Part shown: positions 1 to 62,415 of the stretch, piece after piece
Position numbering within the stretch: position 1 is the first letter of the stretch
How the letters are laid out: each line of letters begins with the position of its first letter
NCBI RefSeq assembly: GCF_006345805.1
Contig: NC_043003.1
Span: 82,770,001-82,834,000, forward strand
Source of the DNA: Octopus sinensis
Taxonomy: Eukaryota
Direction of reading: 5' to 3'
Length of the DNA: 64,000 nucleotides
The notes under the pieces: generated by a model
The model's input: only the letters and a program-made list of their open reading frames with translations
Database searches by the model: none
Told to the model about the DNA's origin: nothing
Position numbers and translations under genes: made by a program

Positions 1-1500
1 CCCAATACATAAAGGGGAAAGTAGAGCAGATGCCAAAAACTATAGGCCTATCTCTCTGACTTCACACATCAGCAAAGTCATGGAACGGATAGTCAGAAAA
101 AAAACTAATCGCATTCCTTGAGGAAAATAACTTGCTGAGTGATACCCAGCATGGTTTTCGACCAGGTAGGAGCTGCCTGACCCAGCTCTTACAGCATTAT
201 GACTGGATGTTGAGGCAGTTACTCAACAAATCAAATGTGGACGTAATCTACCTTGATTTTGCAAAAGTTTTTGACAAGGTGGATCATGGTATGATATGCC
301 AGAAACTGCGTGACCTCGGCATAGTTGGAAAACCTGGAGTGTGGTTACATGACTTCCTGAATGATAGGAGTCAGGTAGTAGTGGTTAATGGATCCACCTC
401 TATGAACACACAAATAGTGAGCGGTGTTCCACAGGGCACTGTCTTGGGACCACTGCTTTTTATAGTGGCCCTCTAAGATATGCCCTCAAATGCCCGGATA
501 GCCACTCTGGCCAGCTATGCAGACGATACGAAAGTCTCGCAGAAAATACAGAACCCCAGCGATGTTGCACACCTGCAGCAGAAGTTGGACTCAATCTACA
601 GATGGGCTGAGGATAATAATATGCAGTTTAATGCTGAAAAATTCCAGGCCCTGCGCTACCAGCATCCAAAACTGAATATTAAACATACAGGATACACCGG
701 TCCACAGGGAATTTAAATCCCAGAGCCTAAGTCTGTGAGGGACCTGGGTATCGACATGAGTGATGATACCTCTTTCCAAATGCACATTACCAAGATGGCG
801 ACAAAGTGCAGACGACTGGCTGGGTGGATCCTAAGAACATTCAGAACCAGAGATGAGGAAACCATGATGGTCCTCTGGCAGACATTCGTCCTCAGCCGCC
901 TGGATTACTGCTCACAGCTATGGTCACCCACCAATGTAAAATTAACAGCTGACCTTGAAGCAATCCAGAGAAGATTCACAAAGAAGATCGTCTCTTTGCA
1001 ACAGCTCAGCTACTGGGAAAGGTTGAAACAGCTAAGACTCTACTCCCTGGAGAGAAAACGGGAGAGATATGCAGTAATATATGTCTGGAAGATCCTGGAA
1101 AAAATTGTGCCAAATTTTGGCATTGTAAGCTACACCAATGCTAGAACGGGACGACACTGCATAGTGCCAAATATCCCAGCAATGTCATCACGCTTCAGGA
1201 CCAGCTTCTGCAACAGCCTGAGTTTCAAGGGCCCACAGCTTTTTAATATTCTCCCAAAGAGTCTGAGGAACTTGCACAAAGTAGATGTAGCGGTTTTTAA
1301 ATCAAAGCTGGACATCTTCCTGTCAAAAGTCCCAGAGGAACCTACCTCACGGCAAGAGGTGCAAATGAGAGTAGCTATATCAAACTCCATTCTTCACTAA
1401 GTGCCACATATTAGACGAGGTTCTTCGCAATAACAGTGCAGCACAAAACGGCGGTGCATCAGCATGGCCGCAGCTCTGAGCTGTAACTAGAAAAAAAAAG
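1..1500 (+). mobile_element. CR1/L2-group LINE, 3' half (RT domain, ORF2 C-terminus, 3' UTR, A-rich tail); inactivated
   Basis: Translations give NYRPISLTS, HGFRPGRSCLTQL, YLDFAKVFDKVDH, GVPQGTVLGPLLF, YADD and SRLDYCSQLWSP. There is an in-frame stop at 474-476 and a frameshift near 716-735. ORF2 ends at 1400 and an A-rich tail starts near 1490. The element runs off the window start. Confidence 0.92.
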
Positions 1501-4285: not shown

Positions 4286-7200
4286 TGTTTCTTTATTAGC
4301 CACACAGGGCTGCACACAGATAGAACAAATTACAAGGTAGAGCTTTTCTTTTGAAGGTTTAAAAAAAAAAAAAAAAAAAAAAAAAGAAAAAGGGAAGGGG
4401 GAGTTTCGATCAAAAGGGATCGTAAAAGGAGAGAAAGAGGACAAAAAAAGGGGGGGTTAAAAAAAAAAAAAAAAAAAAAAAGGGGGAGAGGAAAAAAAAT
4501 TGATCAATAGGGATCGTTATCACAGAAATGTCAATATGAAGTGTAAAGGGGAGGACAGGTGAGGTTTACCCGTGGAAAGAAAAGCCTACGGAAAAGACCA
4601 CGGTAACCTCGGTCAATGAAGTCACATTTTATATTTCTTCTTTTTTTTTTTTTTTTTTTTTTTGCAAATAAGCAACTCTCTGTTTTCGATTTCTGGGTTC
4701 ATAGGACTATGCTCAAGGTGGCTTCGTCATTCATACGTGCCATTCTTGCTACATTCACCCATCTTTTTTTAAAACATTCGCTAGACAAAACTTGCCTCTC
4801 TACTCTCACTTTCCTTTTCAAGTGGTACTTGAAGAAGTTGATGAGAGATTGACCAGAGAGGAAAGTGTTTGTCTCCAATCCTTTCAGACGCGTCCACCAG
4901 ATACATTCTTTCGCCATAGCCACAAGGATGATGAAAATAGCTCTTCCTTCCCGTTTGAAGGAAGGAGGCGTGACAATATTGACGATAGACTCAGCTGATA
5001 AACCGACTCGTCCCACACGTGACAGCAGTTGTTCGACATAAGCCCACAGGTCGGAAATTGTTGGACACTGAACGAGTGCGTGCAGAACGGTTTCGTCGCT
5101 CTGACCGCATCTCGGGCAGGTCGGCCCCGTGTTTCTCGAGCCGTGTCTGTAGAGCTTATCCCGAACGGGTAGCGCTTCTCGGTAGCACTGCCAGGCCAGG
5201 GATCTCTGGAAGTTGTCCATGGGCCCTGGCCCGAAAGTCGTCCCGAACAGGCGGGTCAGGTACTCCTCGTCGACGTCCAGGTTCACCCCGAGCTCGTCGT
5301 CGTACCTCCCCTCCACTAAACCCCTATAGAATGCTTTGGTTGTGTTGAAGTCACTTAAGGTCGACCCAGGACGGCAGAGTTGCTTGAGAGCAACGCGACA
5401 CTCGCGGTGCCATTCGCCCTTCCTCGGCCTCTTTTTGATCCACGACTGCAGTTCGGTCATGGAGACGAGCTGCGGGAAAGCGTGCCTCACAAACGGCGAC
5501 CACACCTGTTCACCGTCGTCTACATAGAGCCAGAGATGTCGCAGTCTCAGCGCGTGTCTGCGCATCATCAACCACGGCATGCCCAGCCCTCCTTTTAACG
5601 GGTGTTGACAGCAAATGGATCGCCTGACCATCGGGACGCATCCTTTCCACAAGAAGCGAAAGAGGATGCGTTGTAGTTTGGTGATGGTAGGGTCGGGACA
5701 AGGTACGACGGTCAGGCGGTAGTAGATGACGGACGCGATGTACGTGTTCGCCACCTCCGCTCGACCTTTTAGGGACAGTTTCCTCTCGGCCCATTGCCGG
5801 GCGAGAGTGACCACCCTACTCGTTATCTCGTTCCAGTTCTTCTCCACTTGGAGGTCCGGACCGAACCAGACCCCGAGCAACTCAACCGGGCCGTCGGTCC
5901 AGCGTCCCACGACGGAGGCGCTGGTGGACGGCATGGGCTTGCTTCTCCAGGTGCCTAGTCGCAAGCCCACTGACTTTTCCCGGTTGATTTTCGCTCCTGT
6001 CACCGCTTCGTAGTTTTTCAGTGTCTCGCCGACCAGCTCGATGTGCTCGTGGCTAGACACTATGACGGTGACGTCGTCCGCGTATGCAGACACGCTCGTC
6101 CCGCATCCCAATTCTCGCGGGATGCCCCTTAGAGTCGCCAGCTTCCGCAGTAGTGGCTCAAGAGTCAATACGTATAGAAGCGCCGAGAGGGGGCATCCCT
6201 GACGGACCGAACGTGCAATGTCGAAAGGTCTTGATAGATGTCCATTTACGCGAATTACCGAACGGATGCCTCTGTACAAGGCAGCTATCCAGCCGCGGAA
6301 GACGGGACCGAAACCAGCCGCTCTCAGGACTGCCTCCAAGTATCGATGGTCTACCCTATCAAAGGCTTTCGATTGATCCAAGTTGATCAGGGCCCCACCC
6401 ATGCCAGGTTCGTTAACTACCCTGTCTATGATGTAGCGCATCAGATGGAGGTTGTCATGGATGGTCCGGCCTGGCACGGCGCATGTTTGCGCCCTGTCGA
6501 CCAGTTTCTCGATGACAAGCGCCAACCTCTTGGCTAGCACCTTGGCCAAAATTTTCAAGTCTGCATTAAGCAGAGTGATGGGCCTAAAGTTATCTATTAC
6601 ATTTCCCTTGTTTAGATCTTTCTTCAGCAGTGTTACGGCTCCTCGGCTCACAAAACCAGGAATGCTCCCGTTTTGCTGCCAGTTGCAGTACACCGCCGCC
6701 AAGAGATCTCCAAACAAGTCTGGCATACAATTGTAAAGCTCGTAGGGTAGACCATCCAAACCCGGTGATTTGTCCCTCGAGCATTCTGCCATCGCTTCCC
6801 GCACTTCCGCCGCCGTGATGGCACCTTCGCAGCACCCTGCCTTTCTTGTCGAGAGTCGTGGTAGGCTATGTAGGTAGGCACTGAAGTCCACCCTACGTTC
6901 TTGCCCTCCACTCGTTCCGAACAGTCGGGCAAAATGCTGCTGAAAGGCCTCACACATTTTACTTGGCTCGAGCAATTCGCGCCCCTGTTCATCTACCAGT
7001 GACCGAATGGTGGCTTTGTTGCCCTGTTGCGCCTCTGCCACCCGGGCCTCTCTCGCGGCTCCAACACCTTCGTTCCTTAGAGCACGCATCCTAGCTCTGA
7101 CAGCACATCCTTCGTGTTTGGCGTTGAAGTGTTGGTCGAGGGCCAACCCCGCCGCCAAAACGTCGGATGCGATTCCGCTTCTAATTGCCTCTTCTAGCTT

Positions 7201-8137
7201 CTTAACTAGCTCACCCTCTACTCTATTTCTATCTATGGCTAGTGCTTTGCTGTACCTAATCGCTTCTGCTTTTACTGCTCTCTTGAGGGCAAACCACCAT
7301 TTGTTGTTGATGATGGCTCCCGTCAAAGCCCTCTTTACTAGTGTGCTAATCCGGTCTCTGAAAACTTGTCTCGATGGGAAAGACGCGTTTAGTTTCCAGT
7401 ATCCGGGACCCTGCCTAAGTGTCTTACCTAAGTCTAGCGTACATGTCACAAGTTTGTGATCCGTGTAGCTGACTATGTGGAATTGTGGACATCCTATGCT
7501 ATCTCTATCTACTGTCCTACACAGTATCCTATCTAGATACGATCTCGACGACCCGATGCGGTTGCTCCATGTCCACGTTGGCGCATTCGGGTGGTCTAGT
7601 CGGAACCTGTCAGACAGTTGAAAGCGTCTGAGCAGGTCTCTGAGGCATTTGCATCCCCGTCTATTCCTATCTCTACCCACGTAGTCTACATGCGTGTCCA
7701 AGGTAGCATTCCAATCCCCCACTAAGAGTAAAGGACGAGACGTTCCCAAGAAAACTTCTAGACGTTGAAAGAAATCTGCCCGACCTGTTAAGGGCGGTGC
7801 GTAAACTGATACGAGTCGAAAAGCGCACCCATTGCTGCCGTCGACATCCAGGACGACCAGTCTACCCTCCGGGTCTACGAATATTGTCCTTACATTGAGA
7901 TCCAGACTCTTGTGAAAAAGTACCGCGGTGCCACTACCGCCCATTCTCGGCAGACAGGGGGAAAAATAAATGTTGAACTGTCCGCCAAACATGGTCTTTA
8001 GGGCCCGCGGATTGTGGAGTCTGGTCTCGCTTATGGCTATGATTTCTAACTTATGTGACTTTATGTCATTTAAGAGGTACCCTTGTTTCCAAGGGGACCC
8101 CAAGCCACGCGCATTTACACAACCAATCTTGATCATA
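4286..8137 (-). mobile_element. L1/Tx1-clade non-LTR retrotransposon (ORF2 plus 3' UTR, no ORF1) between (GATA)n tracts
   Basis: Intact ORF2 and a ~410-nt 3' UTR ending AATAAA-GAAACATA-(TCTA)n (AATAAA at 4292-4297, minus). The 5' end abuts (TCTA)n. Clearly more GC-rich than the flanks. Confidence 0.92.
4699..8136 (-). CDS. ORF2p, 1145 aa: APE endonuclease, reverse transcriptase, C-terminal Cys/His zinc knuckle
   Basis: APE motifs: CVNARGL, IIAISET, YAPP, LVGDWNA, YLDRIL, YTDH. RT motifs: [48 protein letters not shown]. Knuckle: [18 protein letters not shown]. No internal stops. Confidence 0.95.
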
Positions 8138-9976: not shown

Positions 9977-10043
<67 letters not shown>

Positions 10044-10056
10044 TCTGTTATTCTTT

Positions 10057-10273
10057 AACTTATTTCAGTCATTTGCCTATGGCAATGCTTGATCACTCCC
10101 TTAAATGGCTTTAGTCGAAGGAATCGATCCCAGGACCTATTCTCTGTAAGCCTAGTACTTATTCTGTCGGTCTCTATAACGGGGACAGAAACATACCAGC
10201 CTCGGTTTTCAAGCAATGTTGAGAGGACAACCGCAGACACAAAGACACACACACATAAATAAATAAATAAATA

Positions 10274-10315
<42 letters not shown>

Positions 10316-10470
10316 GGCTGGCTTTTCTCCGTTTCCGTCTGCCAACTCTACTCACAAGGACTTGATTGGCCCGACGGTATAGTAGATGACACTTGATCTA
10401 GATGCCGCGCAGTTGGACTGAACCCAAAATCATGAGGTTGTGAAGGAATCTTCTTACCACATAGCCACGC
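10057..10470 (-). mobile_element. tRNA-derived SINE, family A (CORE-like, octopus OK/OR-like), degraded
   Basis: Aligns by eye to the cleaner copies at 10667-11069 and 39960-40422; central (TA)n. Confidence 0.8.
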
Positions 10471-10522
10471 TTGTATGCATGCATATGAATATACATACAG
10501 ACGCACGCGTAGCTACAGGCTC

Positions 10523-11345
10523 AGGAGTAGCTGTGTGGTAAAAATATTGCTCAGGGTTCAAACCAACTGCGTGATACCCTTGGCATGTGTTTACTACTAA
10601 AACTTCGGGCCGATAAAAGCCTTGTGAGTGGATTTGGTTGACGGAAACCGTAATCCTATCGCATATATCTCTTTTTACTCTTTTTACTTGTTTCAGTCAT
10701 TTGACTGCGGCCATGCTGGAGCACCGCCTTTAGTCGAGCAAATCGACCCCGGGACTTATTCTTTGTAAGCCCAGTACTTATTCTATCGGTCTCTTTTGCC
10801 GAACCGCTATGTGACGGGGACGTAAACACACCAGCATCGGTTGTCAAGCAATGCTAGGGGGACAAACATAGACACACAAACACACACACACATATATACA
10901 TACATATATACGACAGGCTTCTTTCAGTTTCCGTCTACCAAATCCACTCACAAGGCATTGGTCGACCCGGGACTATAGCAGAAGACACTTGCCCAAGATG
11001 CCACGCAGTGGGACTGAACCCGGAACCATGTGGTTGGTTAGCAAGCTACTTACCACACAGCCACTGCTGCGCATATGTGTGTATTTGTTTGTGAGTGTGT
11101 CTGCGTGTATGCGTGTGCATGTGCGTTCGCACGCGTGCGTGTTTGTCCCCACCACCAATGCTTGACGACTGGTGCTGGTGTGTTTACGTCCCCGTAACTT
11201 AGTGGTTCGGTAAAAAGAATACGTTAGCATATGTGCCAGTCTTAAAAATAGATAACTATTGGCATTGTTACATTCAACTAGAAATTCTTCAAGGCAGGTT
11301 CCCCGTTATGGTCACAGTCAACTAACAGAAGCAAGAAATAGACCA
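10523..11345 (+). mobile_element. SINE family A, older copy split by a nested antisense copy (halves 10523-10659 and 11077-11345)
   Basis: Head and body before 10660, tail half after 11077; CGCATAT duplicated at 10660-10666 and 11070-11076. Confidence 0.75.
10667..11069 (-). mobile_element. SINE family A, full-length young copy
   Basis: tRNA-like head (GTGGCTGTGTGGTAAG...GGTTCAGTCCC), body CTTGGGCAAGTGTC, tail GGCGGTGCTCCAGCATGGCCGCAGTCAAATGACTGAAAC; 7-bp TSD. Confidence 0.9.
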
Positions 11346-19884: not shown

Positions 19885-20026
19885 GGTGGGCAAATGTGGT
19901 TAAAAAGCTTGCTTTGCAGTCATCCGTTTTGGTTCAATCCCACTGTGCGGCATCTTAGTCTACTTTTTTTTTATAGCATGGACCAATCAATGCTAAGTGA
20001 GTGAAATTTGACAGACGGAAACCAGT

Positions 20027-20065
<39 letters not shown>

Positions 20066-20335
20066 TCACATGCCCACACACACACACGCGCACACACACA
20101 CCACACACACATATATATTGAAAGAGAAAGAGAGATGTGGCATTTTTGTCTTTACATTGCCCTCCTTTGCCGGAGGACCGGTGTTGGTCTCTTTGGGTGC
20201 CTGTAACTTAGCTAATCTCAGTGACAGAATAACTACTTAGAACAAGTACTGCAGTCGATCTGTCAGACTAAACTCTTTTAAAGCGGTGCCCTAGCATGAC
20301 CACAGTCGAATGACTGAAACAAGTAAAATATAAAA
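19885..20335 (+). mobile_element. SINE family A, diverged copy with internal (CA)n
   Basis: Head GGTTCAATCCCACTG; tail GCGGTGCCCTAGCATGACCACAGTCGAATGACTGAAAC. Confidence 0.8.
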
Positions 20336-22402
20336 TCTCTATGCAAAATAGTTTCCTAACATTGTTTCATGTCCTGTATTTCAAGTGAAAGAGTGAAGTT
20401 GGTCAGATCCTATTTAATGACGAAATAATTCTTTACATTGTCGCAAAGCCAACAAGGAATATTGATTAAACTCTAATATATGCATGATACATATCCGTTC
20501 AGGGATGATGAAAGATAAATCGTTTCTGGAGGGTAGACAGCAAATCGGTATTTCATCAGAAGAAAATAAATACTATATAAAGTTCTACACATTCTACCCT
20601 TCCACTACTTTTTATTTTATATAATATCATAAATATTTCTAGGTAATAAATATGAGAGTGATGTATAAAAGCGAACGCACGCTGGTTTAATTATTCTTAA
20701 ATAAAACGATTTTATTGATTGAAACTAAAATCTTTAAAGATGTGATATTCCATATATTACATATATTATATTGAGATTTACCGGAAGCAAAACTCAATGG
20801 AATATAGGAAGTGCGATACTTTTCATCATTATACGTTTACATAAAAAGAAATTAAGTTTAATCTGTTGCTTCAAAGTGATTTTATACTAGTTGTTAATCA
20901 AAGATCAGACGCGATGGGATTCAATTACAGGAGTAGATTTAATGATTTCTCAACATCAAACTCTCTTTTCAAATTTCATAGCCGTGAGGTCAGCCTACTT
21001 AAATTAAATTTGCTCGAAAAATCCAAATGTATATCGAGATAGTCTAATGGTTTAAGTGTTTGTAGCATTTAACGCTAGAATATAGAGGATAGATCGCATG
21101 TATCACCTCTGTTAGATCAAGTCAACACCGATAATTATTGCAAACTGTCACTGATTTATATATCAATGCTGAAATTATACATCCCAGCAGATTGCATAGA
21201 TGTAAATGATACTTTAACAAATAAATATATTACCCATATATTGAATTCCAGATGGGGCTGACCAACGAATCAAATGCATAATCTGTTTAATGTAGTTATA
21301 TGTGCTCATATATGTGAAATTCGACAACTAATTACAAATACCATTACTATCAAAGATCTGAGCCGATTCTTATAAAAGGAAATGTTCCAAAACTTTGTGG
21401 TGTTTTTTGAAATGATGAAATATCCCAGTTGTAGAGGTGCAATAAAAACATAACAGACAAATATCAATTTGCTTAATTGTTGCCATTTATACTGTACGAA
21501 ATGAATTCAAGTACGTTTTCCACCGTTTTCAATTTCTCTGGTTTAAAACCAATATATTTTCGAAATATCTATTAAAACTCTATTTCATTTAATTTCATAA
21601 AAAATAAGTATATATTATTAATATGAAATATGAAAAAATAATCGATATACCATCGAAATATGGAAGATCAATATTTATTGGTATAAGAGTCGTTCGGTCG
21701 CTCTATATTCTAAACCATGAACACAAGTAGAACCCCTGTATATTATTTCTGTCGAAACAATGAGCATTTAAAGTTTTATCTAACATATTAAAGAATGCTC
21801 GCGGTTTGGTAATCTACGTCGTTTGCAGACATTTATTTTAAGTACGTAAGTGGTCTTCATTATCAGGAGGACAGCTGTAACTTCTTACTTACGAAACAAC
21901 CTGAATATTTCTTCAGAATTACTGGTATATCTGTATTAATTTAAATATTCATATATGAAAGAAAATATTGCAACTGTTTTGTACTGAGTTACACCAAAGT
22001 ATACTCAGCTTTTTTAAAGTGATCATCCAAACTTTGTAGGGTAGTACATTACATAAAGAGAACAGTATATAATTTCATAACTGTATTCTCTCGCATAGTT
22101 CTGCTTTAGTAACAAGTCTATACCATGCTTCACTTTACAAAACAGTTGTTACACATTCATATCTATGTGTATATGTGTGTAGAATACATCCCCATTTTGG
22201 CACTATTTGTTAGTGAACAGTACGAACTGTGTTTTAAAGTAAACAGTATTACTACGCCGTGTCTAACGATATATAGGTGTCGCTGCGCTGAAAGTAGGGC
22301 AGTTCGTGTAACATGGAAAAGTAAATAAACACGTGAAAGAATAACTATGCTTCGTATTGAGTTGTCTATCCCAGTAGAAAGAAACTACACATAACAACAG
22401 TG

Positions 22403-28617: not shown

Positions 28618-29957
28618 TTGGCAACTAAGTTCCCGCCGTTTTTTAAAATTTAGTTTTTAAAGGTTTAATTAAAAATAGCAACTAATTAATCAACAATGTA
28701 TTCACCTTTGTTGTTTATAACATCTTCCCAACGTTTAACGAGATTTTCAATACCTCGTTGGTAGAAATCACCCAATTTCGACTCGAAGAATTTATCCAAC
28801 CAAGCTCTCAATTCTGCATTTGTATTGAACGATTCTCCGCGCATTGCATTTGAAAGAGATAGAAAGAGGTGGAAATCCATTGGTTCCAAATCAGGAGAGT
28901 ACAGCGGGTGTGGCAGCACTTCCCAGCCATACGTTTGAATGACTTCCTTGGTCATATTGGCGATATGAGGGCGGGCGTTGTCGTGCAGCAGAACTCCATG
29001 CTGCCGATTAAGTCTTTTCTCTGGAATAGTCGTGTTGAGAACAGAGAATAGTCGTGTTGAGAACATGTCTTGAATATAGAGTTCCGCGTTGACCGGGTGG
29101 TTCCGTTCAAGCAATTCGTAATGTATAATCCCTTCCCAGTCCCACCATACGCACAACATCGTTTAACGTAGATGAAAATCTTGTTTCACGCGCGGTGTCG
29201 CTTGTTTACCGGGATTAAGCCATTCCTTACGCTGCTTCATATTGATGTACTGGGACCACTTTTCGTCGCCAGTAATGATTCGGTAAAGAAATCGTTGTTT
29301 GTGTGCATGAGTTGTGCGGAAACGAGCAAGCAAACCGGTGGAGATTGTAACTTGTTGATTTTTGTTGTTGTCATTTAAAGGATGTGGAACCCATGCTCCA
29401 TACTTCTTGAACTTTTCCATTGAGTGATGATGCTTCTCTATAGCAGTGTGAGAGCATTCCATTTCCCCTGCCAGTTCTCTATAGCAGTGTGAGAGCATTC
29501 CATTTCCCCTGCCAGTTCACTTTTTCGTGCAAAAGTTTGTTTAATCGCTCATCGTCGAACTCAACAGGACGGCCAGAACGAGGTACGTCTTTGAGGTCCA
29601 AAATTTCCATTTTTGAACTTGGCAAACTAATCACGAGTGGTTCTTTCAGCTATAGCATCCTCTCCATATACAGCACAAATGTCTCGAACAGCTTTTGCGG
29701 CCTTACAACCTTGATTCAAAGCAAAAAGGAGTATGTGTCGAAAATGCTCGTTTTTTTTATTTTAACTTGACATTCCATTTTAATGATCTGAAAATACACA
29801 AAAATTAACTAAATTTAACTAGAAAAAAAAAAACAAAGTACATTCCAAAATGACTCAAAAATAGAATTCTCAAAAAAAAAATAATAGATTCCAAAATTTA
29901 AAAACGCAGTATATTCCAAAATTTAAAGAAACGGCGAGAAACTAGTTGCCAACACAA
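28618..29957 (-). mobile_element. Mariner transposon, second copy of the 13721-14988 family in opposite orientation
   Basis: TIRs at 28618-28640 (outer 5 bp lost) and 29930-29957, flanked by TA. ORF pieces contain ITGDEKW, WWDWEGIIHYELL, HDNARPH and YSPDLEPMDFHLF. Two internal tandem duplications. Confidence 0.95.
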
Positions 29958-31205: not shown

Positions 31206-32014
31206 ATATATATATACACATATATATATATTATATATATATAAACATATATATATACACATATATATATATATATGAATATGAATATATGCGTATGTGA
31301 ACATTTATATATATATAATATATATATATATCACATACAAACATAGTTAAAGACACATATATATATATATATATTTATATATAAATACATATGATGATAT
31401 ATACCTGTATACACATATGAACATACATGTATAAATATACGAACGTATTTATGAGTATGTATATGTCTGTGTGTGTGTCTATGTATAGTTCTAAGTACAT
31501 ATATATATATATGTATATGAGAATATTTTTGTATGTACGTATGTGTGTGTGTGTGTGTGTGTGTTTGTAGGTTGTTAGGTAGGTAGGTATTGCTCCGTTG
31601 TCATGAACATCAGTGAATTGTTTTGTTTTGTTTGTATATACATTTCACATAAAGTCAACTAAAATTTAACCGTGAAGAATTGCAATGCATAAAAACGAAA
31701 TTAAACATCTATTAAATTACCTTACAGAAAATTGTGGATGAAAGCTAATATAACAAAAACAGATGACGAAAATAACGCTTAACGACGAACAAAAGAATAT
31801 ACACACATACATGCACGTACACACACACATACACACACTCACACACACACACACACATCACACAAGTGCACAGGTGAACGCACAATCGTGTATAGAAACA
31901 AAGGAGACGACACACATTTGTACACACAACTTTGTGTTTTTATATTACATATATATTCATGTGTGTATGTGCTTGTGTGTCTATGTGTACATATGTTATA
32001 TATATATGTATATG

Positions 32015-32089
<75 letters not shown>

Positions 32090-32116
32090 ATATATATATA
32101 TATATTATATATATAT
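30640..32116. repeat. Cluster of (TA)n/(TG)n/(CA)n low-complexity tracts
   Basis: Read directly. The many I/Y/H/T/V/C-rich ORFs here are artefacts. Confidence 0.85.
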
Positions 32117-32476
32117 ACTCTATACTCTTTTACTCTTTTACTTGTTTCAGTCATTTGACTGCGGCCATGCTGGAGCACCGCCTTTAGTCGAGCACATCGA
32201 CCCCAGAGCTTATTCTTTGTAAGCCTAGTACTTATTCTATCGGTCTCTTTTGCCGAACCGCTAAGTTGCGGGGGTGTAAACACACCGGCATCGGTTATCA
32301 TGCGATGTTGGGGGGACACACACAGACACAAACACACACACACACACATACATATATAGATATATATATATATACATATATACGACAGGTTTCTTTCAGT
32401 TTCCGTCTACCAAATCCATTCACAAGGCTTTGGTCGGCCCGAGGCTATAGTAGAAGGCACTTGCCCAATGTGTTAC
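32117..32476 (-). mobile_element. SINE family A body and tail lacking its tRNA head (replaced by 5S rRNA)
   Basis: Collinear with 10667-11029 from GTAACACATTGGGCAAG (normally GTGGCACCTTGGGCAAG) to the (GAGTAAAA)n tail. Confidence 0.9.
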
Positions 32477-32594
32477 GCTTACTGCAGCTAGGTTTCCCAA
32501 GCGGTCACCCATCTAAGTACTGACAAGGCTCGACGTTGCTTAACTTCGGTGATCAGACGAGAACAGGTGCTTTCAACGTGATATGGCCATAACC
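32477..32594 (-). rRNA. 5S rRNA: Full-length 5S rRNA-derived copy (118 nt), probably a pseudogene or SINE head
   Basis: GGTTATGGCCATATCACGTTGAAAGCACCTGTTCTCGTCTGATCACCGAAGTTAAGCAACGTCGAGCC...AGTACTTAGATGGGTGACCGCTTGGGAA...GTAAGC. Box A- and box C-like elements are recognisable; there is no T-run terminator. Confidence 0.93.
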
Positions 32595-32686
32595 ACGTAC
32601 ACACACATGTGTATGCACATATATATATATGTATATATGTGTATACATATATATATATAATATATATATATGTACACACACATATA

Positions 32687-32724
<38 letters not shown>

Positions 32725-32748
32725 GTGTGTATATATATCTTCATATGG

Positions 32749-32797
<49 letters not shown>

Positions 32798-32801
<4 letters not shown>

Positions 32802-33180
32802 GCACTCCGTCGGTTACGACGACGAGGGTTCCGGTTGATCCGATCAACGGAACAGCCGGCTCGTGAAATTAACGTGTAAGTGGCTGAGCACTCCACAGAC
32901 ACGTGTACCCTTAACGTAATTCTCGGAGATATTCAGCGTGACACAGATAGTGACAAGGCCGGCCCTTTGAAATACAGGTACAACAGAAACAGGAAGTAAG
33001 AGTGAGAGAAAGTTGTGGTGAAAGAGTACAGCAGGGATCACCACCATCCACTGCCGGAGCCTCGTGGAGCTTTAGGTGTTTTCGCTCGATAAACACTCAC
33101 AACGCCCGGTCTGGAAATCGAAACCGCGATCCTACGACCACGAGTCCGCTGCCCTAACCACTGGGCCATTGCGCCTCCAC
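32798..33180 (-). mobile_element. tRNA-derived SINE, family C, full length
   Basis: Head GGCGCAATGGCCCAGTGGTTAGGGCAGCGGACTC...GGTTTCGATTTCC (A/B boxes); GC-rich structured tail; flanked by (TA)n. Confidence 0.88.
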
Positions 33181-33478
33181 TATATATATATATAAATATA
33201 TAGAAGGACATTTTTTGATTCGAATGTTATGTGAACATTTGGACACTTCCTTCGAGATGGAGATAATTCTAATAAAATTTAAAATATATGTTGGATGGAA
33301 TTTGTTAAACATATACCTGTCTATATATGACCTTGGCTACTCAGTGTTATTTCCTTTACGTCATTTTTGTGCAATATAAAAATAACATAGGCTGATAAAT
33401 GTGTGCTCTTCTCTTTTTATATGTCCTTGATTTTGGTGACTCCGACTGTACGATCAAGGTCTTTAGTGTTGCTAACAG

Positions 33479-36251: not shown

Positions 36252-36461
36252 ATTAGCAGAGATATCCGGCGTTGCTCTGTATTAAACGAGCATAGCTGTT
36301 TTATTGTTTTACTTGTTTCGGTCGTGTGGTTGCGGCCATGCTGGAGCACCGTCTTTAGTCCAAGAAATATACCACAGTTTATATTCCTTGTAAGTCTAGT
36401 ACTTATTCGATATACATATATATATGTGTGTGTGTGTTTATATATACATATATATACATAT

Positions 36462-39710: not shown

Positions 39711-39959
39711 ATTTTATTCTGAGATTTACTCATTTCTTTAAATTAGCGACTAGGAGCTGCATGGGACATTTGAATCGCATTCTTTAGAAGTATATGTTTA
39801 TCTGGCTGTATGATTCGAGTGCATATCCCTCGCATAAACTCATACAGATAAGCAGGTTTGTGAATATATGTATATATATTTATGCACTCACGCACACACA
39901 CACATATGTAGTAAATGACATAATCAGTTAGAATATGAGAATAATATAAATACATTGGC

Positions 39960-40118
39960 ACAGGAGTGGCTGTGTGGTAAGTAGCTTGCTTACCAACCAC
40001 ATGGTTCCAAGTTCATTCCCACTGCATGGCACCTTGGGCAAGTGTCTTCTACTATAGCCTCGGGCCGACCAAAGCCTTGTGAGTGGATTTGTTACACGGA
40101 AACTGAAAGAAGCCCGTC

Positions 40119-40185
<67 letters not shown>

Positions 40186-40422
40186 ATATATATGTATGTA
40201 TGTGTGTGTGCTTATGTGTTTGTGTTTGTCTCCCCCAACGTTGCTTGACAACCGATGGTAGTGTGTTTATGTCCCCATAACTTAGCGGTTCGGCAAAAGA
40301 GACCGATAGAATAATTACTAGGCTTACAAAGAATAAGTCCTAGGGCCGATTTGCTCGACTAAAGGCGGTGCTCCAGTATGGCTACAGTCAAATGACTGAA
40401 ACAAGTAAAAGAGTAAAAGAGT
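39960..40422 (+). mobile_element. SINE family A, full length with internal (TA)n
   Basis: CAGGAGTGGCTGTGTGGTAAG head through GACTGAAACAAGTAAAAGAGTAAAAGAG tail. Confidence 0.92.
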
Positions 40423-42251
40423 AAATAAAATTCGGGGACCAGGAGATTATTGTGAAAGATAATAAAATGTACATGAACATTTCGTTTAACAGAAATCTCG
40501 TTGAATGCTTCATTATGTATCCACACTGCGTTAGTGTACAATGTGTGTTACACTTTATGTCGTGTATATTTTATCATGTGTTCATTATCCTTTATTATAC
40601 ACACACCACAAATGGAGCTATATCAAGATTTTCTAAACAAATGAAAAAAGGTGTGAAAGCATTTCAAATTCGACTACACCTTCCATTCAAACGTACATAC
40701 TCAACAAATGTTTTTGACTTGAAATTAAATGTATTCATGGATCTTTCCAATTTACATGACGCAGATTACTGCCATATAATTTCATTTCAAATATACAATC
40801 ACGAATAGCTGTTAATGTAATTTAACAAGTGTCGGAATTTAATTTGTGTATTTGCTCTTACCTATCTGTTTATCTTAATAAGGAACACCAGATATTCCAG
40901 TGGGAATGAAAGCAGGGACACACTCTGTCGATTACTAATTCAGTATGGTATTTGCTGTACCTGTTGTTTAAAAAGCAGGTGCTAGTCGTTTTTTTTTTTT
41001 TTTACGTGTCAAACAAATCAAACACAAACAATATACCTTTATTTTTCTTGTATTTAATATATTATTTCTAAATTATTTTTTATAGGAAAATCCAAAAAGA
41101 CAGATCCTTAGTAAATAAATAAAACGCATAAGAAGCTACACCTATGCAAGAGTGAGCAGCAGAAAAAAAAATTAATTCCTCACTAAATGCAAATAAGTGA
41201 AGTGTGACGAGAACAGATTCAGAACAAACTAGCTGAAAAGCGACGAGCAATCAATACGCGTGCTAACAACTTTGCTACGATAAGATTGGGTGTAACCGAG
41301 CGTCTCATATTTTCGTTTTTATTTTACTTAATTTTCTTTGTTTTATTTATTCATTTGCTGTTTTTGCTGCAACAGGGGCTTACTTAAGGAACACTTCTTA
41401 TCTAAAATAAGAATTATATTTGAACGTTTTGATTAATCCATCATTTAGGTAGATTTAATCTATATTTCTTTTAAAACTTTTTATTTATTCATTTAATTAT
41501 TTATTTATTTATTAGACCTGTTCCTCCTTTCAAATCCGTCTCAGTGTCTGTGTGTGTTTAGAACACAGCAAAATGATGCATTTGTAAAAATGCATCGAAG
41601 CGCATACATTTCGCAGACTGAATGAATTCATGTTTGAGGATGTTTGTTTGTTCAGAATCTAACACTGGTTCATTACGCGGATGTTTTTCTTTTTCAAGCC
41701 TCGCTGTGCCTGAATGTATCGTTTGATTTCGTCGAACATAAAGCTAACAGAAGCAGTGGCAGCATAACAACGAAAGCAAATATACGTGTCATTGTACATT
41801 AGAGTAAACAGGCGAGATATTCAAAGCAATTTTGTCAATTTGTATAGAGAGGGCGTGATCTATCATTGAACAGATTTCCAAAAACGTTGATTTGTCGACT
41901 ATGGTGATGATGAGGATGATAATCATGACAATGAAGATGATGATGATGATGTTGATGATGATGATGATGATGATGATGATAACACCAATAGTGATAATAA
42001 GAACATCAACAAAAACAGCAACAACAAAACGTTAATAATAATAATAATAATAATGAGTAGAAAAAGAAAGAAAAAATAATTATTACATTATAGAATGCGG
42101 AGTATGTATAAATTGTGTATATATACTTGCTCAGTTGTGAATATGTATGTAAGAATATAGAGGATATTGTATAAACACACAATCAAATACAAAGTCACAT
42201 GAGTAGGCATACACACACATTTACACATACATATACATATACATATATATG

Positions 42252-47282: not shown

Positions 47283-47454
47283 GACAGTTACAGAATATAG
47301 AAGGAAGTGTAAAACCGATAACTATGAAATCCAACCAAAATATCCGTTACGCAAACGTAAACATAATTACTATTTAGCCTTAAAGTACATCGTACGTATT
47401 CAGAGAACCCTCTTGGTTCAGTGGTACGGAAAGTTTTTCTCGTAATTTTTTATT

Positions 47455-47650
47455 CTTTTAGTTGCTTCAGTCATTTGACGATGGCCATGATGGAGCACCG
47501 GCCTTTATTCGGAGAAATTGACGCCTTGACTTAATCCCTTTAAACATGGTGCTCATTCTATCAGTCTTTTCTGCTGAACAGCTAAGTTACAGGGACGCAA
47601 ATGCACCAACATCGGTTGCCAAGCAATAGTGGTGGAGACAAACAGACACA
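47455..47650 (-). mobile_element. SINE family A, 3' half, degraded
   Basis: GCTTCAGTCATTTGACGATGGCCATGATGGAGCACCG tail motif. Confidence 0.75.
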
Positions 47651-47681
47651 GACACAAACATGCACACGCATAAATATATAC

Positions 47682-47742
<61 letters not shown>

Positions 47743-59012: not shown

Positions 59013-59191
59013 GTAAGTGGGTAGCCAGGAAGTTACAAGCAATATGAGTGATGAATTAAAGAGAGGGACATATCAGAAAGATAAGTTTGCTGGAATCAGT
59101 AACTCTGCTCTATATTAATTGTATTTTGAGAATCAGTACAATCTCATGAATGTCACTTCATACAACCATTGATATATTGATATATCTTTTA

Positions 59192-59400
59192 TCTTTTACT
59201 TGTTTCAGTCATCACAATGTGGCTATGCTGGAGCTTTGCTTTGGTGAGTTTTTTGTCGAATTAATTGGCCCTAGTCCTTATTTTCCCAGGCCTGGTACTT
59301 ACTCTGCTATGCCACAGTTAGGTAAACATACCGATACCGGTTGCCAAGCGGTGGTAGCAGACAGGTCCAGGCACAAAGACACTCACACACATACACACAC
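59192..59400 (-). mobile_element. SINE family A, 3' half, degraded
   Basis: TTTTACTTGTTTCAGTCAT...GGCTATGCTGGAGC tail motif. Confidence 0.7.
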
Positions 59401-59470
59401 AAACGCACGCAGATACGCACACAGACACACACACTCACACACATACACACACACAAACAAACACATAAGC

Positions 59471-60699: not shown

Positions 60700-60862
60700 G
60701 TGGTTACATAGTCTTCTTTTTTATCTACCAAATCCACTGACAAGGCTTTAGTCGCCCCGAAGCTATAGTGGAAGTCACCAGCTCAAGTTGCCACGCATTG
60801 GGATAGAAACCAGTATTGCGTGGTTGAGAAGGAAACATCATTTCAACCAGCCACAATTGCAC
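60700..60862 (-). mobile_element. SINE family A, 5' half, degraded
   Basis: CGTCTACCAAATCC-like body and head remnants collinear with 10930-11068. Confidence 0.65.
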
Positions 60863-61928: not shown

Positions 61929-62118
61929 CAGGTGTAGCTGTGTGGTAGGAAACTTGCTTCTTAACCACATGGCTCCGGGTTCAGTCCCTCCGCGTGGCAA
62001 AATGAGCAAGTGTCTTCCAGTCTAGACTTTGACTGACAAAAATCTTGTGAGTGTATATCGGAGACGGAAAGCGAAAGGAGCCCGTCGCACACCTGTGCCT
62101 GTGTGCGTGTGTGTGTGT

Positions 62119-62150
<32 letters not shown>

Positions 62151-62415
62151 TGTGTGTGTCTGTGTATCTGTGTCTGTGTGTCTGTGTGTGTGTGTTTGTG
62201 TGTGCATGTCTTTGTCCCCATTCGCTACTTGACAACCGGTGGTTGTGGGTTCACGTCTGCATAACATAGTGGTTCGGCGAAAGGAGATGATAGAATGAAT
62301 ACTAGACTTGAAAAACTGATAAGTCCTAGTATCGATTTGTTCGACTAAAACCCTTCAAGGCGGTGCCCCAGCATGGCTGTAGTCAAATGACCGAGACAAG
62401 TAAATGATAAAAGAT
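61929..62415 (+). mobile_element. SINE family A, full length with internal (GT)n
   Basis: GTAGCTGTGTGGTAGG...GGGTTCAGTCCC head; tail GGCGGTGCCCCAGCATGGCTGTAGTCAAATGACCGAGAC. Confidence 0.88.

What the first reader, a model, noticed from the sequence alone, without database searches (positions are those of the whole stretch)
32117..32594. 5S rRNA-headed SINE: tRNA head precisely swapped for a full-length 5S rRNA
On the minus strand, a complete 118-nt 5S-like sequence ends ...GTAAGC and runs directly into GTAACACATTGGGCAAG. In normal family A copies this point follows the tRNA B-box region (...CCCACTGC|GTGGCA(C/T)CTTGGGCAAG), and the junction has a 2-nt GC microhomology. Box A and box C are recognisable. 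No TTTT occurs on this strand through the SINE body, so a Pol III type-1 transcript could carry the whole ~480-nt chimera with its LINE-type tail. 5S-headed SINEs (SINE3, AmnSINE1) are known from vertebrates and some other animals, but I know of none described in cephalopods. This is either a new SINE3-like subfamily or a one-off template-switch chimera.
Basis: partly seen in the sequence, partly recalled or inferred. Interest (0 to 1): 0.8.

Follow-up and report, generated by a model that had tools for sequence, protein, structure and literature searches.

The report
5S rRNA head on octopus SINE
A decayed copy of an abundant octopus jumping element (a SINE) carries a full-length 5S ribosomal RNA copy in place of its usual tRNA-like front end; this head swap is already known from fish, mammals and insects, so the find is real but fairly ordinary.

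Summary
Rfam finds one full-length 5S rRNA match at 32476-32594 (-), at 88.6 bits and E 1e-17. It runs without a spacer into the body and tail of the window's common SINE, 'family A'. In normal copies a tRNA-like head ends at that point (…CCCACTGC|GTGGCAYCTTGGGCAAG). No displaced head lies nearby. There is no T-run at the joint, and the first TTTT on this strand is at 31794.

The 5S part is decayed: 5 of 34 model pairs are broken. The body is about as diverged as its neighbours, roughly 4-6%. Both flanks are (TA)n/(TG)n microsatellite, so target-site duplications cannot be read.

The best reading is a single RNA-mediated unit, made when a LINE reverse transcriptase switched template from SINE RNA to 5S rRNA.

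I could not test directly whether it is a family member or a one-off, because no collection available here holds octopus DNA. A published supplementary table does list de novo repeat families labelled SINE/5S-Core-RTE (778 hits) and SINE/5S (1,095 hits) in Octopus bimaculoides. I therefore favour membership of a low-copy 5S-headed family (about 0.6) over a one-off chimera (about 0.28). It is a new member of a known kind, of modest interest.

The parts
32476..32594 (-). Full-length 5S rRNA-derived head (119 nt), decayed.
   Evidence: Rfam RF00001 at 88.6 bits, model positions 1-120, E 1.2e-17. 5 of 34 consensus pairs are non-canonical. The MFE is -25.7 kcal/mol, z = +1.3 against shuffles.
32532..32546 (-). 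Box A of the Pol III type-1 internal promoter (AAGTTAAGCAACGTC, 5S positions 49-63).
   Evidence: Placed by position in the Rfam alignment and the established Xenopus 5S internal control region map (box A +50-64). This is an inference, not a functional test.
32524..32529 (-). Intermediate element (GCCTTG, 5S positions 66-71).
   Evidence: Positional homology. Two of the five broken pairs (32527 and 32525) fall here.
32499..32516 (-). Box C (TTAGATGGGTGACCGCTT, 5S positions 79-96).
   Evidence: Positional homology in the Rfam alignment.
32468..32477 (-). Junction zone between 5S and SINE: …AAGC|GTAACACA|TTGGGCAAG. The breakpoint cannot be placed more finely.
   Evidence: Alignments A1 and A2. 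Family A reads CTGCGTGGCAYCTTGGGCAAG and the chimera reads AAGCGTAACACATTGGGCAAG. The GC(GT) is shared, and 3-4 of the next 8 nt mismatch.
32383..32467 (-). Family A SINE body, 5' half (TTGGGCAAGTG…GAAACCTGTCG). This is a CORE-like conserved region.
   Evidence: 92.8% identity to 40030-40126 and 86% to 10996-10664; alignment. A 79%-identical piece lies in an Argonauta hians gene locus.
32316..32382 (-). Internal (TA)n(TG)n microsatellite that all family A copies carry at this position, with variable length.
   Evidence: Alignments.
32118..32315 (-). Family A SINE body, 3' half, and the tail (…GTCAAATGACTGAAACAAGTAAAAGAGTAAAAGAG TATAGAG).
   Evidence: 88% identity to 40162-40423 and 86% to the 10.6k copy. 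The tail units align with those of other copies.
32595..32796 (-). 5' flank: (TA)n/(TG)n microsatellite that also forms the tail of the upstream 'family B' SINE (32797-33182).
   Evidence: Sequence read directly. No family A head lies here. Only sub-threshold miRNA-model noise was found.
31990..32117 (-). 3' flank: (TA)n microsatellite. No target-site duplication can be read.
   Evidence: Sequence read directly. The TSD search returns only microsatellite matches.

Best explanation
The segment 32118-32594(-) is one retroposed unit. It is a derivative of the resident family A SINE in which a complete 5S rRNA copy has replaced the tRNA-like head.

Origin (inferred): during target-primed reverse transcription of a family A SINE RNA, the partner LINE's reverse transcriptase reached the 3' edge of the folded tRNA-like head. 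It then switched template to the 3' end of a 5S rRNA molecule and copied it to its first nucleotide. RNA ligation before reverse transcription is a variant that would give the same product.

Consequence (inferred): the product carries the 5S internal promoter (box A, IE, box C) with no terminator. Pol III could therefore transcribe 5S plus body plus LINE-recognised tail, which is the architecture of SINE3-type elements.

Status of this copy: I think it is more likely than not a dead member of a low-copy family of a few hundred to about a thousand copies, of the kind that automated annotation of O. bimaculoides labels SINE/5S-Core-RTE or SINE/5S. I think it less likely to be the only product of the event.

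Shown: the anatomy, the collinearity, the absence of a displaced head, and the decay. Inferred: template switching, promoter use and family membership.

The confidence of 0.6 is for the full statement, including family membership. For the narrower claim of a single RNA-mediated 5S/SINE chimera, whether amplified or not, my confidence is about 0.88.
For: - The 5S is full length (model 1-120), in sense orientation, and directly abuts the 5'-truncated SINE body with no spacer, tail or T-run.
- Body and tail are a typical young family A copy. Its private divergence is about 4-6%, like neighbours A10.6 and A40. The 5S part shows comparable decay, with 5 of 34 pairs broken. Both parts therefore look equally old.
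- No family A head lies within 7 kb. Heads occur only at 11080-10997, 10471-10401, 39952-40031 and 61934-61999.
- (TA)n lies on both sides of the whole unit, which fits one insertion into a microsatellite.
- Literature on the mechanism and precedent: HaSE3 is a 5S head on the HaSE1 body and tail, and template switching was proposed for it (PMC3272025). Switching to small RNAs is the accepted way SINE modules are exchanged (PMC4758252 and PMC4824008). Chimeras in the same orientation fit template switching or RNA ligation (bioRxiv 10.1101/2025.02.02.635956).
- Evidence for a family: the RepeatModeler2 de novo library of O. bimaculoides contains families labelled SINE/5S-Core-RTE (0.0213876% of 3,637,615 classified elements, i.e. 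778 hits) and SINE/5S (1,095 hits), beside 1.12 million SINE/tRNA-Core hits (PMC8967140 Table S2/S3 and methods).
- Sampling argument (inference): about 1,900 copies in 2.3 Gb would give a roughly 5% chance per random 64-kb window. A few tens of independent one-off chimeras would give about 0.05%.
Against: - No second copy of the junction was seen, and no collection reachable here contains octopus DNA. The negative junction searches are therefore uninformative.
- The published labels are automatic. I could not read the consensus sequences, so I do not know that they share this junction or this body, or that the window comes from that species.
- O. vulgaris shows 0 for 5S-Core-RTE.
- No target-site duplication could be identified.
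- The sampling argument fails if many octopus windows were scanned.
Confidence: 0.6

Rival explanations
1. One-off chimeric retrocopy. A single template switch (or RNA ligation) joined 5S rRNA to a family A SINE RNA during one retrotransposition event, and the product never amplified. It would be comparable to the U6/L1 and 5S/L1 chimeras of mammals.
For: - The anatomy is exactly what one event predicts: a full-length small RNA in sense orientation at the 5' end and a 5'-truncated retroelement with its own tail at the 3' end.
- Only one copy lies in the 64 kb.
- The mismatch-rich 8 nt at the joint could be non-templated additions.
Against: - Such events are rare. The human genome holds 253 chimeras in total, about 10% of them with 5S, and those are mostly antisense and truncated. 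Meeting a unique one in a random 64-kb window is therefore improbable.
- Families labelled SINE/5S-Core-RTE and SINE/5S exist in a de novo O. bimaculoides library.
Confidence: 0.28
2. Two independent events produced the adjacency. Either a 5S retropseudogene landed exactly at the 5' end of an already 5'-truncated family A copy, or a truncated SINE inserted at the terminator of an orphan 5S gene.
For: - 5'-truncated family A copies do occur in the window (47448-47708 and 36292-36408).
- (TA)n tracts attract insertions. Three elements are packed into 31990-33182.
Against: - There is no tail, A-run or T-run between the 5S and the SINE. There is also no TTTT terminator anywhere before 31794.
- There is no TSD around either part alone.
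- 5S rRNA on its own lacks the 3' tail that tail-specific LINE enzymes need (established knowledge, Kajikawa and Okada 2002, cited).
- The two parts show similar decay.
- An exact abutment in the same orientation would be a coincidence.
Confidence: 0.07
3. Assembly artefact or DNA-level rearrangement. The joint was created by misassembly in a repeat-rich, microsatellite-flanked region, or by a deletion between a 5S pseudogene and a SINE.
For: The region is dense in microsatellites and SINEs, which is a classic setting for collapse and chimeric joins. I had no reads to check.
Against: - The joint falls exactly at the mature 3' end of the 5S and at a module boundary of the SINE, in the same orientation. 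RNA-level joining predicts this and random misjoining does not.
- Both partners are non-microsatellite sequence across the joint.
Confidence: 0.05

Closest known systems
HaSE3 of Helicoverpa armigera (5S rRNA head on the body and tail of the tRNA-derived SINE HaSE1)
   Same: A 5S-derived head with box A/IE/box C joined to the body and 3' tail of a co-resident tRNA-derived SINE. Template switching from SINE RNA to 5S rRNA was proposed as the origin (PMC3272025).
   Different: HaSE3 was shown to be a family, with several copies in several species and TSDs of 8-19 bp. Here there is one copy, no readable TSD, and a different host phylum, body and tail.
SINE3 / AmnSINE1 / megabat MEG-RS class of 5S-derived SINEs (RepeatMasker classes SINE/5S, 5S-Deu-L2, 5S-Core-RTE)
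   Same: The module order is 5S head, then a central domain or body, then a LINE-type tail. A possible remnant of the tRNA-related 3' end is kept after the 5S, as in the Deu-SINE subgroup where a 5S was fused to a tRNA-derived head (Nishihara 2006, as summarised). De novo families with these labels are listed for O. bimaculoides and A. dux.
   Different: Copy number, Pol III transcription and a partner LINE are not shown for this element. Its body is the octopus family A body, not the Deu domain. CORE membership is only a lead.
Bipartite chimeric retrogenes made by LINE template switching (U6/L1, 5S/L1; Buzdin 2003)
   Same: A small Pol III RNA at the 5' end, a 5'-truncated retroelement with its own tail at the 3' end, and a direct joint.
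   Different: In human the 5S segments are mostly antisense and truncated at positions 46 or 90. Here the 5S is full length and in sense orientation, like the U6 chimeras. The 3' partner is a SINE, not a LINE. The mammalian chimeras do not propagate, whereas this architecture could.
Octopus tRNA-Core SINEs (OR1/OR2 of Ohshima and Okada 1994; the 'SINE/tRNA-Core' class that makes up about 27-31% of classified octopus repeats)
   Same: Family A has box A/B-like motifs, a CTTGGGCAAGT-type start to its central region, high density in the window (at least 9 copies or fragments in 64 kb), and relatives in O. bimaculoides and Argonauta hians proteins.
   Different: I could not compare family A with the OR1/OR2 consensus sequences. 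The head is not recognised as a tRNA by ARAGORN or Rfam.

Membership tests
SINE (formal SINEBase criteria, PMC3531059) | Short (<1 kb) interspersed, non-tandem repeat | tested here: met
   The unit is 477 nt (32118-32594). It is solitary in 64 kb and not tandem.
SINE (formal SINEBase criteria, PMC3531059) | At least 60% identity to tRNA, 5S rRNA or 7SL RNA over at least 60 nt | tested here: met
   Full-length Rfam 5S match at 88.6 bits.
SINE (formal SINEBase criteria, PMC3531059) | [quoted passage not shown] | not testable with these tools
   No octopus genome is reachable. The positive-control SINE body pattern is absent from all three DNA collections. Indirect only: 778 hits labelled SINE/5S-Core-RTE and 1,095 labelled SINE/5S in O. 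bimaculoides.
5S-derived SINE (SINE3 type) | 5S-derived 5' head that retains box A, IE and box C | tested here: met
   All three blocks are present by positional homology. Two broken pairs lie in the IE region.
5S-derived SINE (SINE3 type) | Non-5S body and a 3' tail shared with a LINE, or with a co-resident SINE mobilised by that LINE | tested here: met
   Body and tail are collinear with family A copies at 86-92% identity. The partner LINE was not identified. The intact LINE at 4699-8136 shares no tail with it.
5S-derived SINE (SINE3 type) | Transcribed by Pol III from the 5S promoter, with copies descending from SINE RNA rather than from cellular 5S | not testable with these tools
   There are no RNA or ChIP data and no second copy in which to look for shared diagnostic substitutions.
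5S-derived SINE (SINE3 type) | Copies flanked by target-site duplications | tested here: inconclusive
   Both flanks are (TA)n/(TG)n. The only non-trivial repeat, TGTGTGTACGTG at 32594-32605 and 31814-31825, occurs 4 times in the window and would enclose about 300 bp of extra sequence. Normal copies show TSDs of about 7-10 nt.
Template-switch chimeric retrocopy (Buzdin type) | Full-length small RNA at the 5' end, in the same orientation as a 5'-truncated retroelement that carries its own 3' tail, joined directly | tested here: met
Template-switch chimeric retrocopy (Buzdin type) | Unique event, not propagated | not testable with these tools
   This needs a genome-wide junction count.
CORE-SINE superfamily | Conserved central CORE domain of about 60 nt after the tRNA-related head | tested here: inconclusive
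It covered only CTGYGTG..CCTTGGGCAAGT. The literature places octopus OR1/OR2 in the CORE-SINEs, and tRNA-Core is the dominant octopus SINE class.
Functional 5S rRNA gene | Intact 5S secondary structure | tested here: not met
   5 of 34 model pairs are non-canonical, in helices I, III and V. The fold is no better than shuffles, z = +1.3.
Functional 5S rRNA gene | T-run terminator directly after the gene, and membership of a tandem array | tested here: not met
   There is no TTTT for 800 nt downstream. The window holds a single copy.

The most novel reading that the evidence does not exclude
Octopods independently gave birth to an amplifying 5S-headed SINE by swapping the head of their dominant tRNA/CORE SINE at the head-body boundary, and that lineage is young or still active. 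One genome would then hold the same body and tail driven by two different Pol III promoter types (type 1 and type 2). That is a natural experiment on how the promoter module affects SINE success, and it would be the first characterised 5S-SINE in molluscs.
Probability: 0.15. Interest if true: 0.55.

Novelty: new member of a known kind. Interest (0 to 1): 0.3.

Why it matters
SINE families arise when a Pol III promoter module is joined to a LINE-recognised tail. Examples that keep both the parent SINE (family A, very abundant) and the head-swapped product in the same genome show how this module exchange happens. If the 5S-headed form is a real family, it would be a formally undescribed molluscan SINE3-type element. 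It would also let Pol III type-1 and type-2 promoters be compared on an identical body. If it is a one-off, it is a textbook template-switch chimera involving a non-L1 LINE and a SINE. Either way the mechanism and the architecture are already known from vertebrates and insects, and automated annotation has already flagged such families in cephalopods.

Tried and rejected
- Junction peptide against the protein collection. The 48-aa peptide (window 32377-32520 +) found no candidates with the search for homologous proteins. The HMMER scan of 1.84 billion representatives gave 3 hits. P0056 (Argonauta hians) continues into a normal tRNA-type head. P0057 (O. bimaculoides A0A0L8G8B0) is a peroxidase-like model with an exonised SINE piece. 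P0058 is unrelated. None spans a 5S joint.
- Degenerate junction pattern in metagenome, viral and prokaryote-genome contigs: 0 hits. Positive-control SINE body patterns also gave 0, so these negatives say nothing.
- Exact look-up of 7 window ORFs, three of them spanning the junction, to find the source assembly or Logan contigs: none on record. P0057 is also absent.
- Sampling octopod DNA through LINE and peroxidase homologues. L001 (GCA_024449705.1, 3 kb), L002 (ENA metagenome contig) and L003 (Argonauta hians, 33 kb) hold no family A copies beyond one 79% core-like piece, and no 5S.
- TSD search: only microsatellite matches.
- Partner LINE: the intact LINE in the window shares nothing with the SINE tail.
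- tRNA identity of the family A head: not detected by ARAGORN or Rfam.
- Octopus or squid 5S reference sequence: Walker and Doolittle 1983 and Albertin 2015 are not held.
- Full-text search for SINE sequence strings: 0.
- Rejected idea: that the miRNA-model hits at 32597-32805 mean anything. All are far below the gathering score and lie in (TA)n.

Full report
**What is there**

Rfam's 5S_rRNA model matches 32476-32594 on the minus strand from model position 1 to 120, at 88.6 bits (gathering score 38) and E 1.2e-17. This is the only hit above threshold in the whole 64-kb window (repeated locally). A word-7 BLAST finds no other 5S fragment.

Reading the minus strand, the 5S ends …CCTAGCTGCAGTAAGC(G) and continues without any spacer as GTAACACATTGGGCAAGTGCCTTCTACTATAGCCTCGGGCCGACC….

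Full copies of family A lie at 10664-11080(-), 39952-40423(+), 61934-62414(+) and 10039-10471(-). Fragments lie at 47448-47708, 36292-36408, 10520-10650, about 19900-20340, about 59180-59420 and about 60700-60860.

In the full copies the same point reads …GGTTCAGTCCCACTGC|GTGGCA(T/C)CTTGGGCAAGTGTC… (alignments A1 and A2). From the junction to the tail (…GTCAAATGACTGAAACAAGTAAAAGAGTAAAAGAG, ending about 32118-32125) the chimera is collinear with family A. This includes the internal (TA)n(TG)n microsatellite. Identity to the two youngest neighbours is 86-92%.

There is no TTTT on this strand between 32700 and 31901. The first is at 31794.

**Qualifications to the observation**

- The 8 nt after the joint (GTAACACA against GTGGCAYC) carry 3-4 mismatches, far denser than the rest of the body. 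The breakpoint can only be placed within about 32468-32477. These bases may be a mutated remnant of the head's 3' end or non-templated additions.
- The 2-nt GC overlap has no statistical weight.
- The family A head looks tRNA-like by its box A/B-type motifs (TGGCTGTGTGG…GGTTCAGTCCC). Neither ARAGORN nor Rfam at E<=1 recognises it as a tRNA.

**State of the copy**

Five of the 34 base pairs of the 5S consensus structure are non-canonical: two in helix I, one in helix III and two in helix V. The sequence folds no better than shuffles, at -25.7 kcal/mol and z = +1.3. It is not a working 5S rRNA gene. It also lacks a terminator and is solitary.

By my count from the alignment, the SINE body has about 13-16 private differences in about 290 non-microsatellite positions, or roughly 5%. 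Neighbours A10.6 and A40 are similar at about 4-5%. The head and the body therefore look equally old, which fits a single insertion. The box A, IE and box C blocks are all present by position, although two of the broken pairs fall in the IE region.

**Context**

On the minus strand the order is as follows:

| Coordinates | Feature |
|---|---|
| 33182-32797 | A different SINE, 'family B' |
| 32796-32595 | Its (TA)n/(TG)n tail |
| 32594-32118 | The chimera |
| 32117-31990 | More (TA)n |
| to about 31815 | CA/TG-rich sequence |

No family A head lies anywhere near; the closest is 7 kb away.

Target-site duplications cannot be read in these microsatellite flanks. The only non-trivial repeat is TGTGTGTACGTG, at 32594-32605 and 31814-31825. 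It occurs four times in the window and would enclose about 300 bp of unrelated sequence. Normal family A copies do show TSDs of about 7-10 nt (ATATGCG; AAATA(C/A)A(A)TT).

**Mechanism**

The anatomy has three parts: a full-length Pol III RNA in sense orientation at the 5' end, a 5'-truncated retroelement with its own tail at the 3' end, and a direct joint with no tail or T-run. This is what a template switch by the LINE reverse transcriptase from SINE RNA to 5S rRNA predicts. Ligation of the two RNAs before reverse transcription would give the same product.

This is the accepted route for SINE module exchange and for chimeric retrogenes (PMC4758252 and PMC4824008; bioRxiv 10.1101/2025.02.02.635956). 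The closest precedent is HaSE3 of Helicoverpa, a 5S head on the body and tail of the tRNA-derived HaSE1 (PMC3272025).

Two independent insertions are unlikely. Nothing separates the parts, no terminator is present, and 5S rRNA alone lacks the tail that tail-specific LINEs require. I could not exclude misassembly without reads. However, a joint that falls exactly at the mature 5S 3' end and at a SINE module boundary is not what a random misjoin gives.

**Family or one-off**

This was the decisive question, and I could not test it directly. None of the reachable collections holds octopus DNA.

- The junction pattern and positive-control SINE body patterns both gave zero hits in metagenome, viral and prokaryote-genome contigs.
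- Searches with a peptide translated across the junction found only normal tRNA-headed or exonised family A sequences, from Argonauta hians and O. bimaculoides.
- Exact look-ups of seven window ORFs found nothing.
- The few loci fetched through homologues contained no family A copies and no 5S.

The literature did help.

- The giant squid genome paper reports about 24,000 5S-derived loci, many 'likely to be SINEs' (PMC6962438).
- Table S2 of PMC8967140 is based on de novo RepeatModeler2 libraries for each species (methods). For O. bimaculoides it lists SINE/5S-Core-RTE at 0.0213876% and SINE/5S at 0.0301021% of 3,637,615 classified elements. That is 778 and 1,095 RepeatMasker hits, beside SINE/tRNA-Core at 30.9%, or 1.12 million.
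- The same table lists SINE/5S at 0.0387% and 5S-Core-RTE at 0 for O. vulgaris, and SINE/5S-Deu-L2 at 1.18% for A. dux.

RepeatModeler builds consensi only from multi-copy sequence. At least one multi-copy family carrying 5S-like sequence therefore exists in an octopus, and one label (5S head, CORE domain, RTE tail) matches the architecture seen here. There are three caveats. The labels are automatic. I could not see the consensus sequences. I do not know that the window comes from that species.

A sampling argument points the same way, though it is inference. About 1,900 such copies in 2.3 Gb give roughly a 5% chance per random 64-kb window. A few tens of independent one-off chimeras give about 0.05%.

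I therefore put membership of a low-copy 5S-headed family at about 0.6, a one-off chimera at about 0.28, two independent events at about 0.07, and an artefact or rearrangement at about 0.05.

**Comparison with known kinds, and novelty**

The element works like a SINE3-type element and looks like HaSE3, AmnSINE1 and the megabat 5S SINEs.

- Membership of 'SINE' by the SINEBase criteria (PMC3531059) is met for length and 5S similarity. It is untestable for copy number.
- It is not a functional 5S gene.
- CORE-SINE membership of family A is only a lead. The literature does place octopus OR1/OR2 among the CORE-SINEs, and tRNA-Core is the dominant octopus SINE class.

The kind is known and the mechanism is known, and automated annotation has already flagged such families in cephalopods. 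What is missing is a formal description in a mollusc. I rate it a new member of a known kind, with interest of about 0.3.

Noticed in passing
window 4699-8136 (-): An uninterrupted 1145-aa LINE ORF with endonuclease (Exo_endo_phos), RVT_1 and zf-RVT domains. It sits in a 50% GC island against a background of about 35%, so it may be a recently active element. The closest protein is only 71% identical (a 3-kb contig of GCA_024449705.1). All others are about 40% identical, and the exact ORF is not on record. Its 3' end shares nothing with the family A SINE tail, so it is not the partner LINE.
   Followed up: partly
window 32797-33182 (-): A second, unrelated SINE-like element ('family B'). It starts GGAGGCGCAATGGCCCAGTGGTTAGGGC…GGTTTCGATTTCC and ends …GGAGTGCTTCA(TA)n, directly upstream of the chimera. 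It is the only copy in the window, and Rfam does not call its head a tRNA at E<=1.
   Followed up: partly
window 32383-32467 (-); P0057; L003 10991-11080: The 5' body (CORE-like) region of family A, read antisense, is part of an O. bimaculoides peroxidase-like protein model (UniRef A0A0L8G8B0: …QVSFSFHLPNPLTRLWSARGYSRRHL…). A 79%-identical piece lies inside the chorion-peroxidase-like gene range of Argonauta hians. This is either an old exonised SINE piece conserved across octopods or a shared annotation artefact.
   Followed up: partly
window 32594-32605 and 31814-31825 (-): The 12-mer TGTGTGTACGTG directly precedes, and overlaps by one base, the 5S start. It recurs about 780 nt downstream on the same strand, just before the first TTTT (31794). 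It occurs 4 times in the window. It is probably microsatellite chance. If it were a real TSD, the inserted unit would include about 300 bp beyond the SINE tail.
   Followed up: partly
window 10039-11080: A nest of three family A-type copies. These are 10039-10471(-), a head-deleted copy at about 10520-10650(+), and 10664-11080(-), which is flanked by the repeat ATATGCG and appears to have inserted into the end of the second copy.
   Followed up: no
window 28686-29498 (-): A mariner-type transposase remnant (Transposase_1/DDE_3) split by a stop codon into ORFs of 111 and 157 aa.
   Followed up: partly
window 132-1400 (+): A fragment of another non-LTR reverse transcriptase (RVT_1 hit at 132-476). 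The following 221-aa ORF has no Pfam match. It is cut by the start of the window.
   Followed up: no
window 32597-32805 (both strands): The (TA)n/(TG)n tract gives many sub-threshold hits to miRNA models (mir-297, mir-466, mir-3149, mir-1277 and others, 20-48 bits against gathering scores of 49-101). This is low-complexity noise, not genes.
   Followed up: yes
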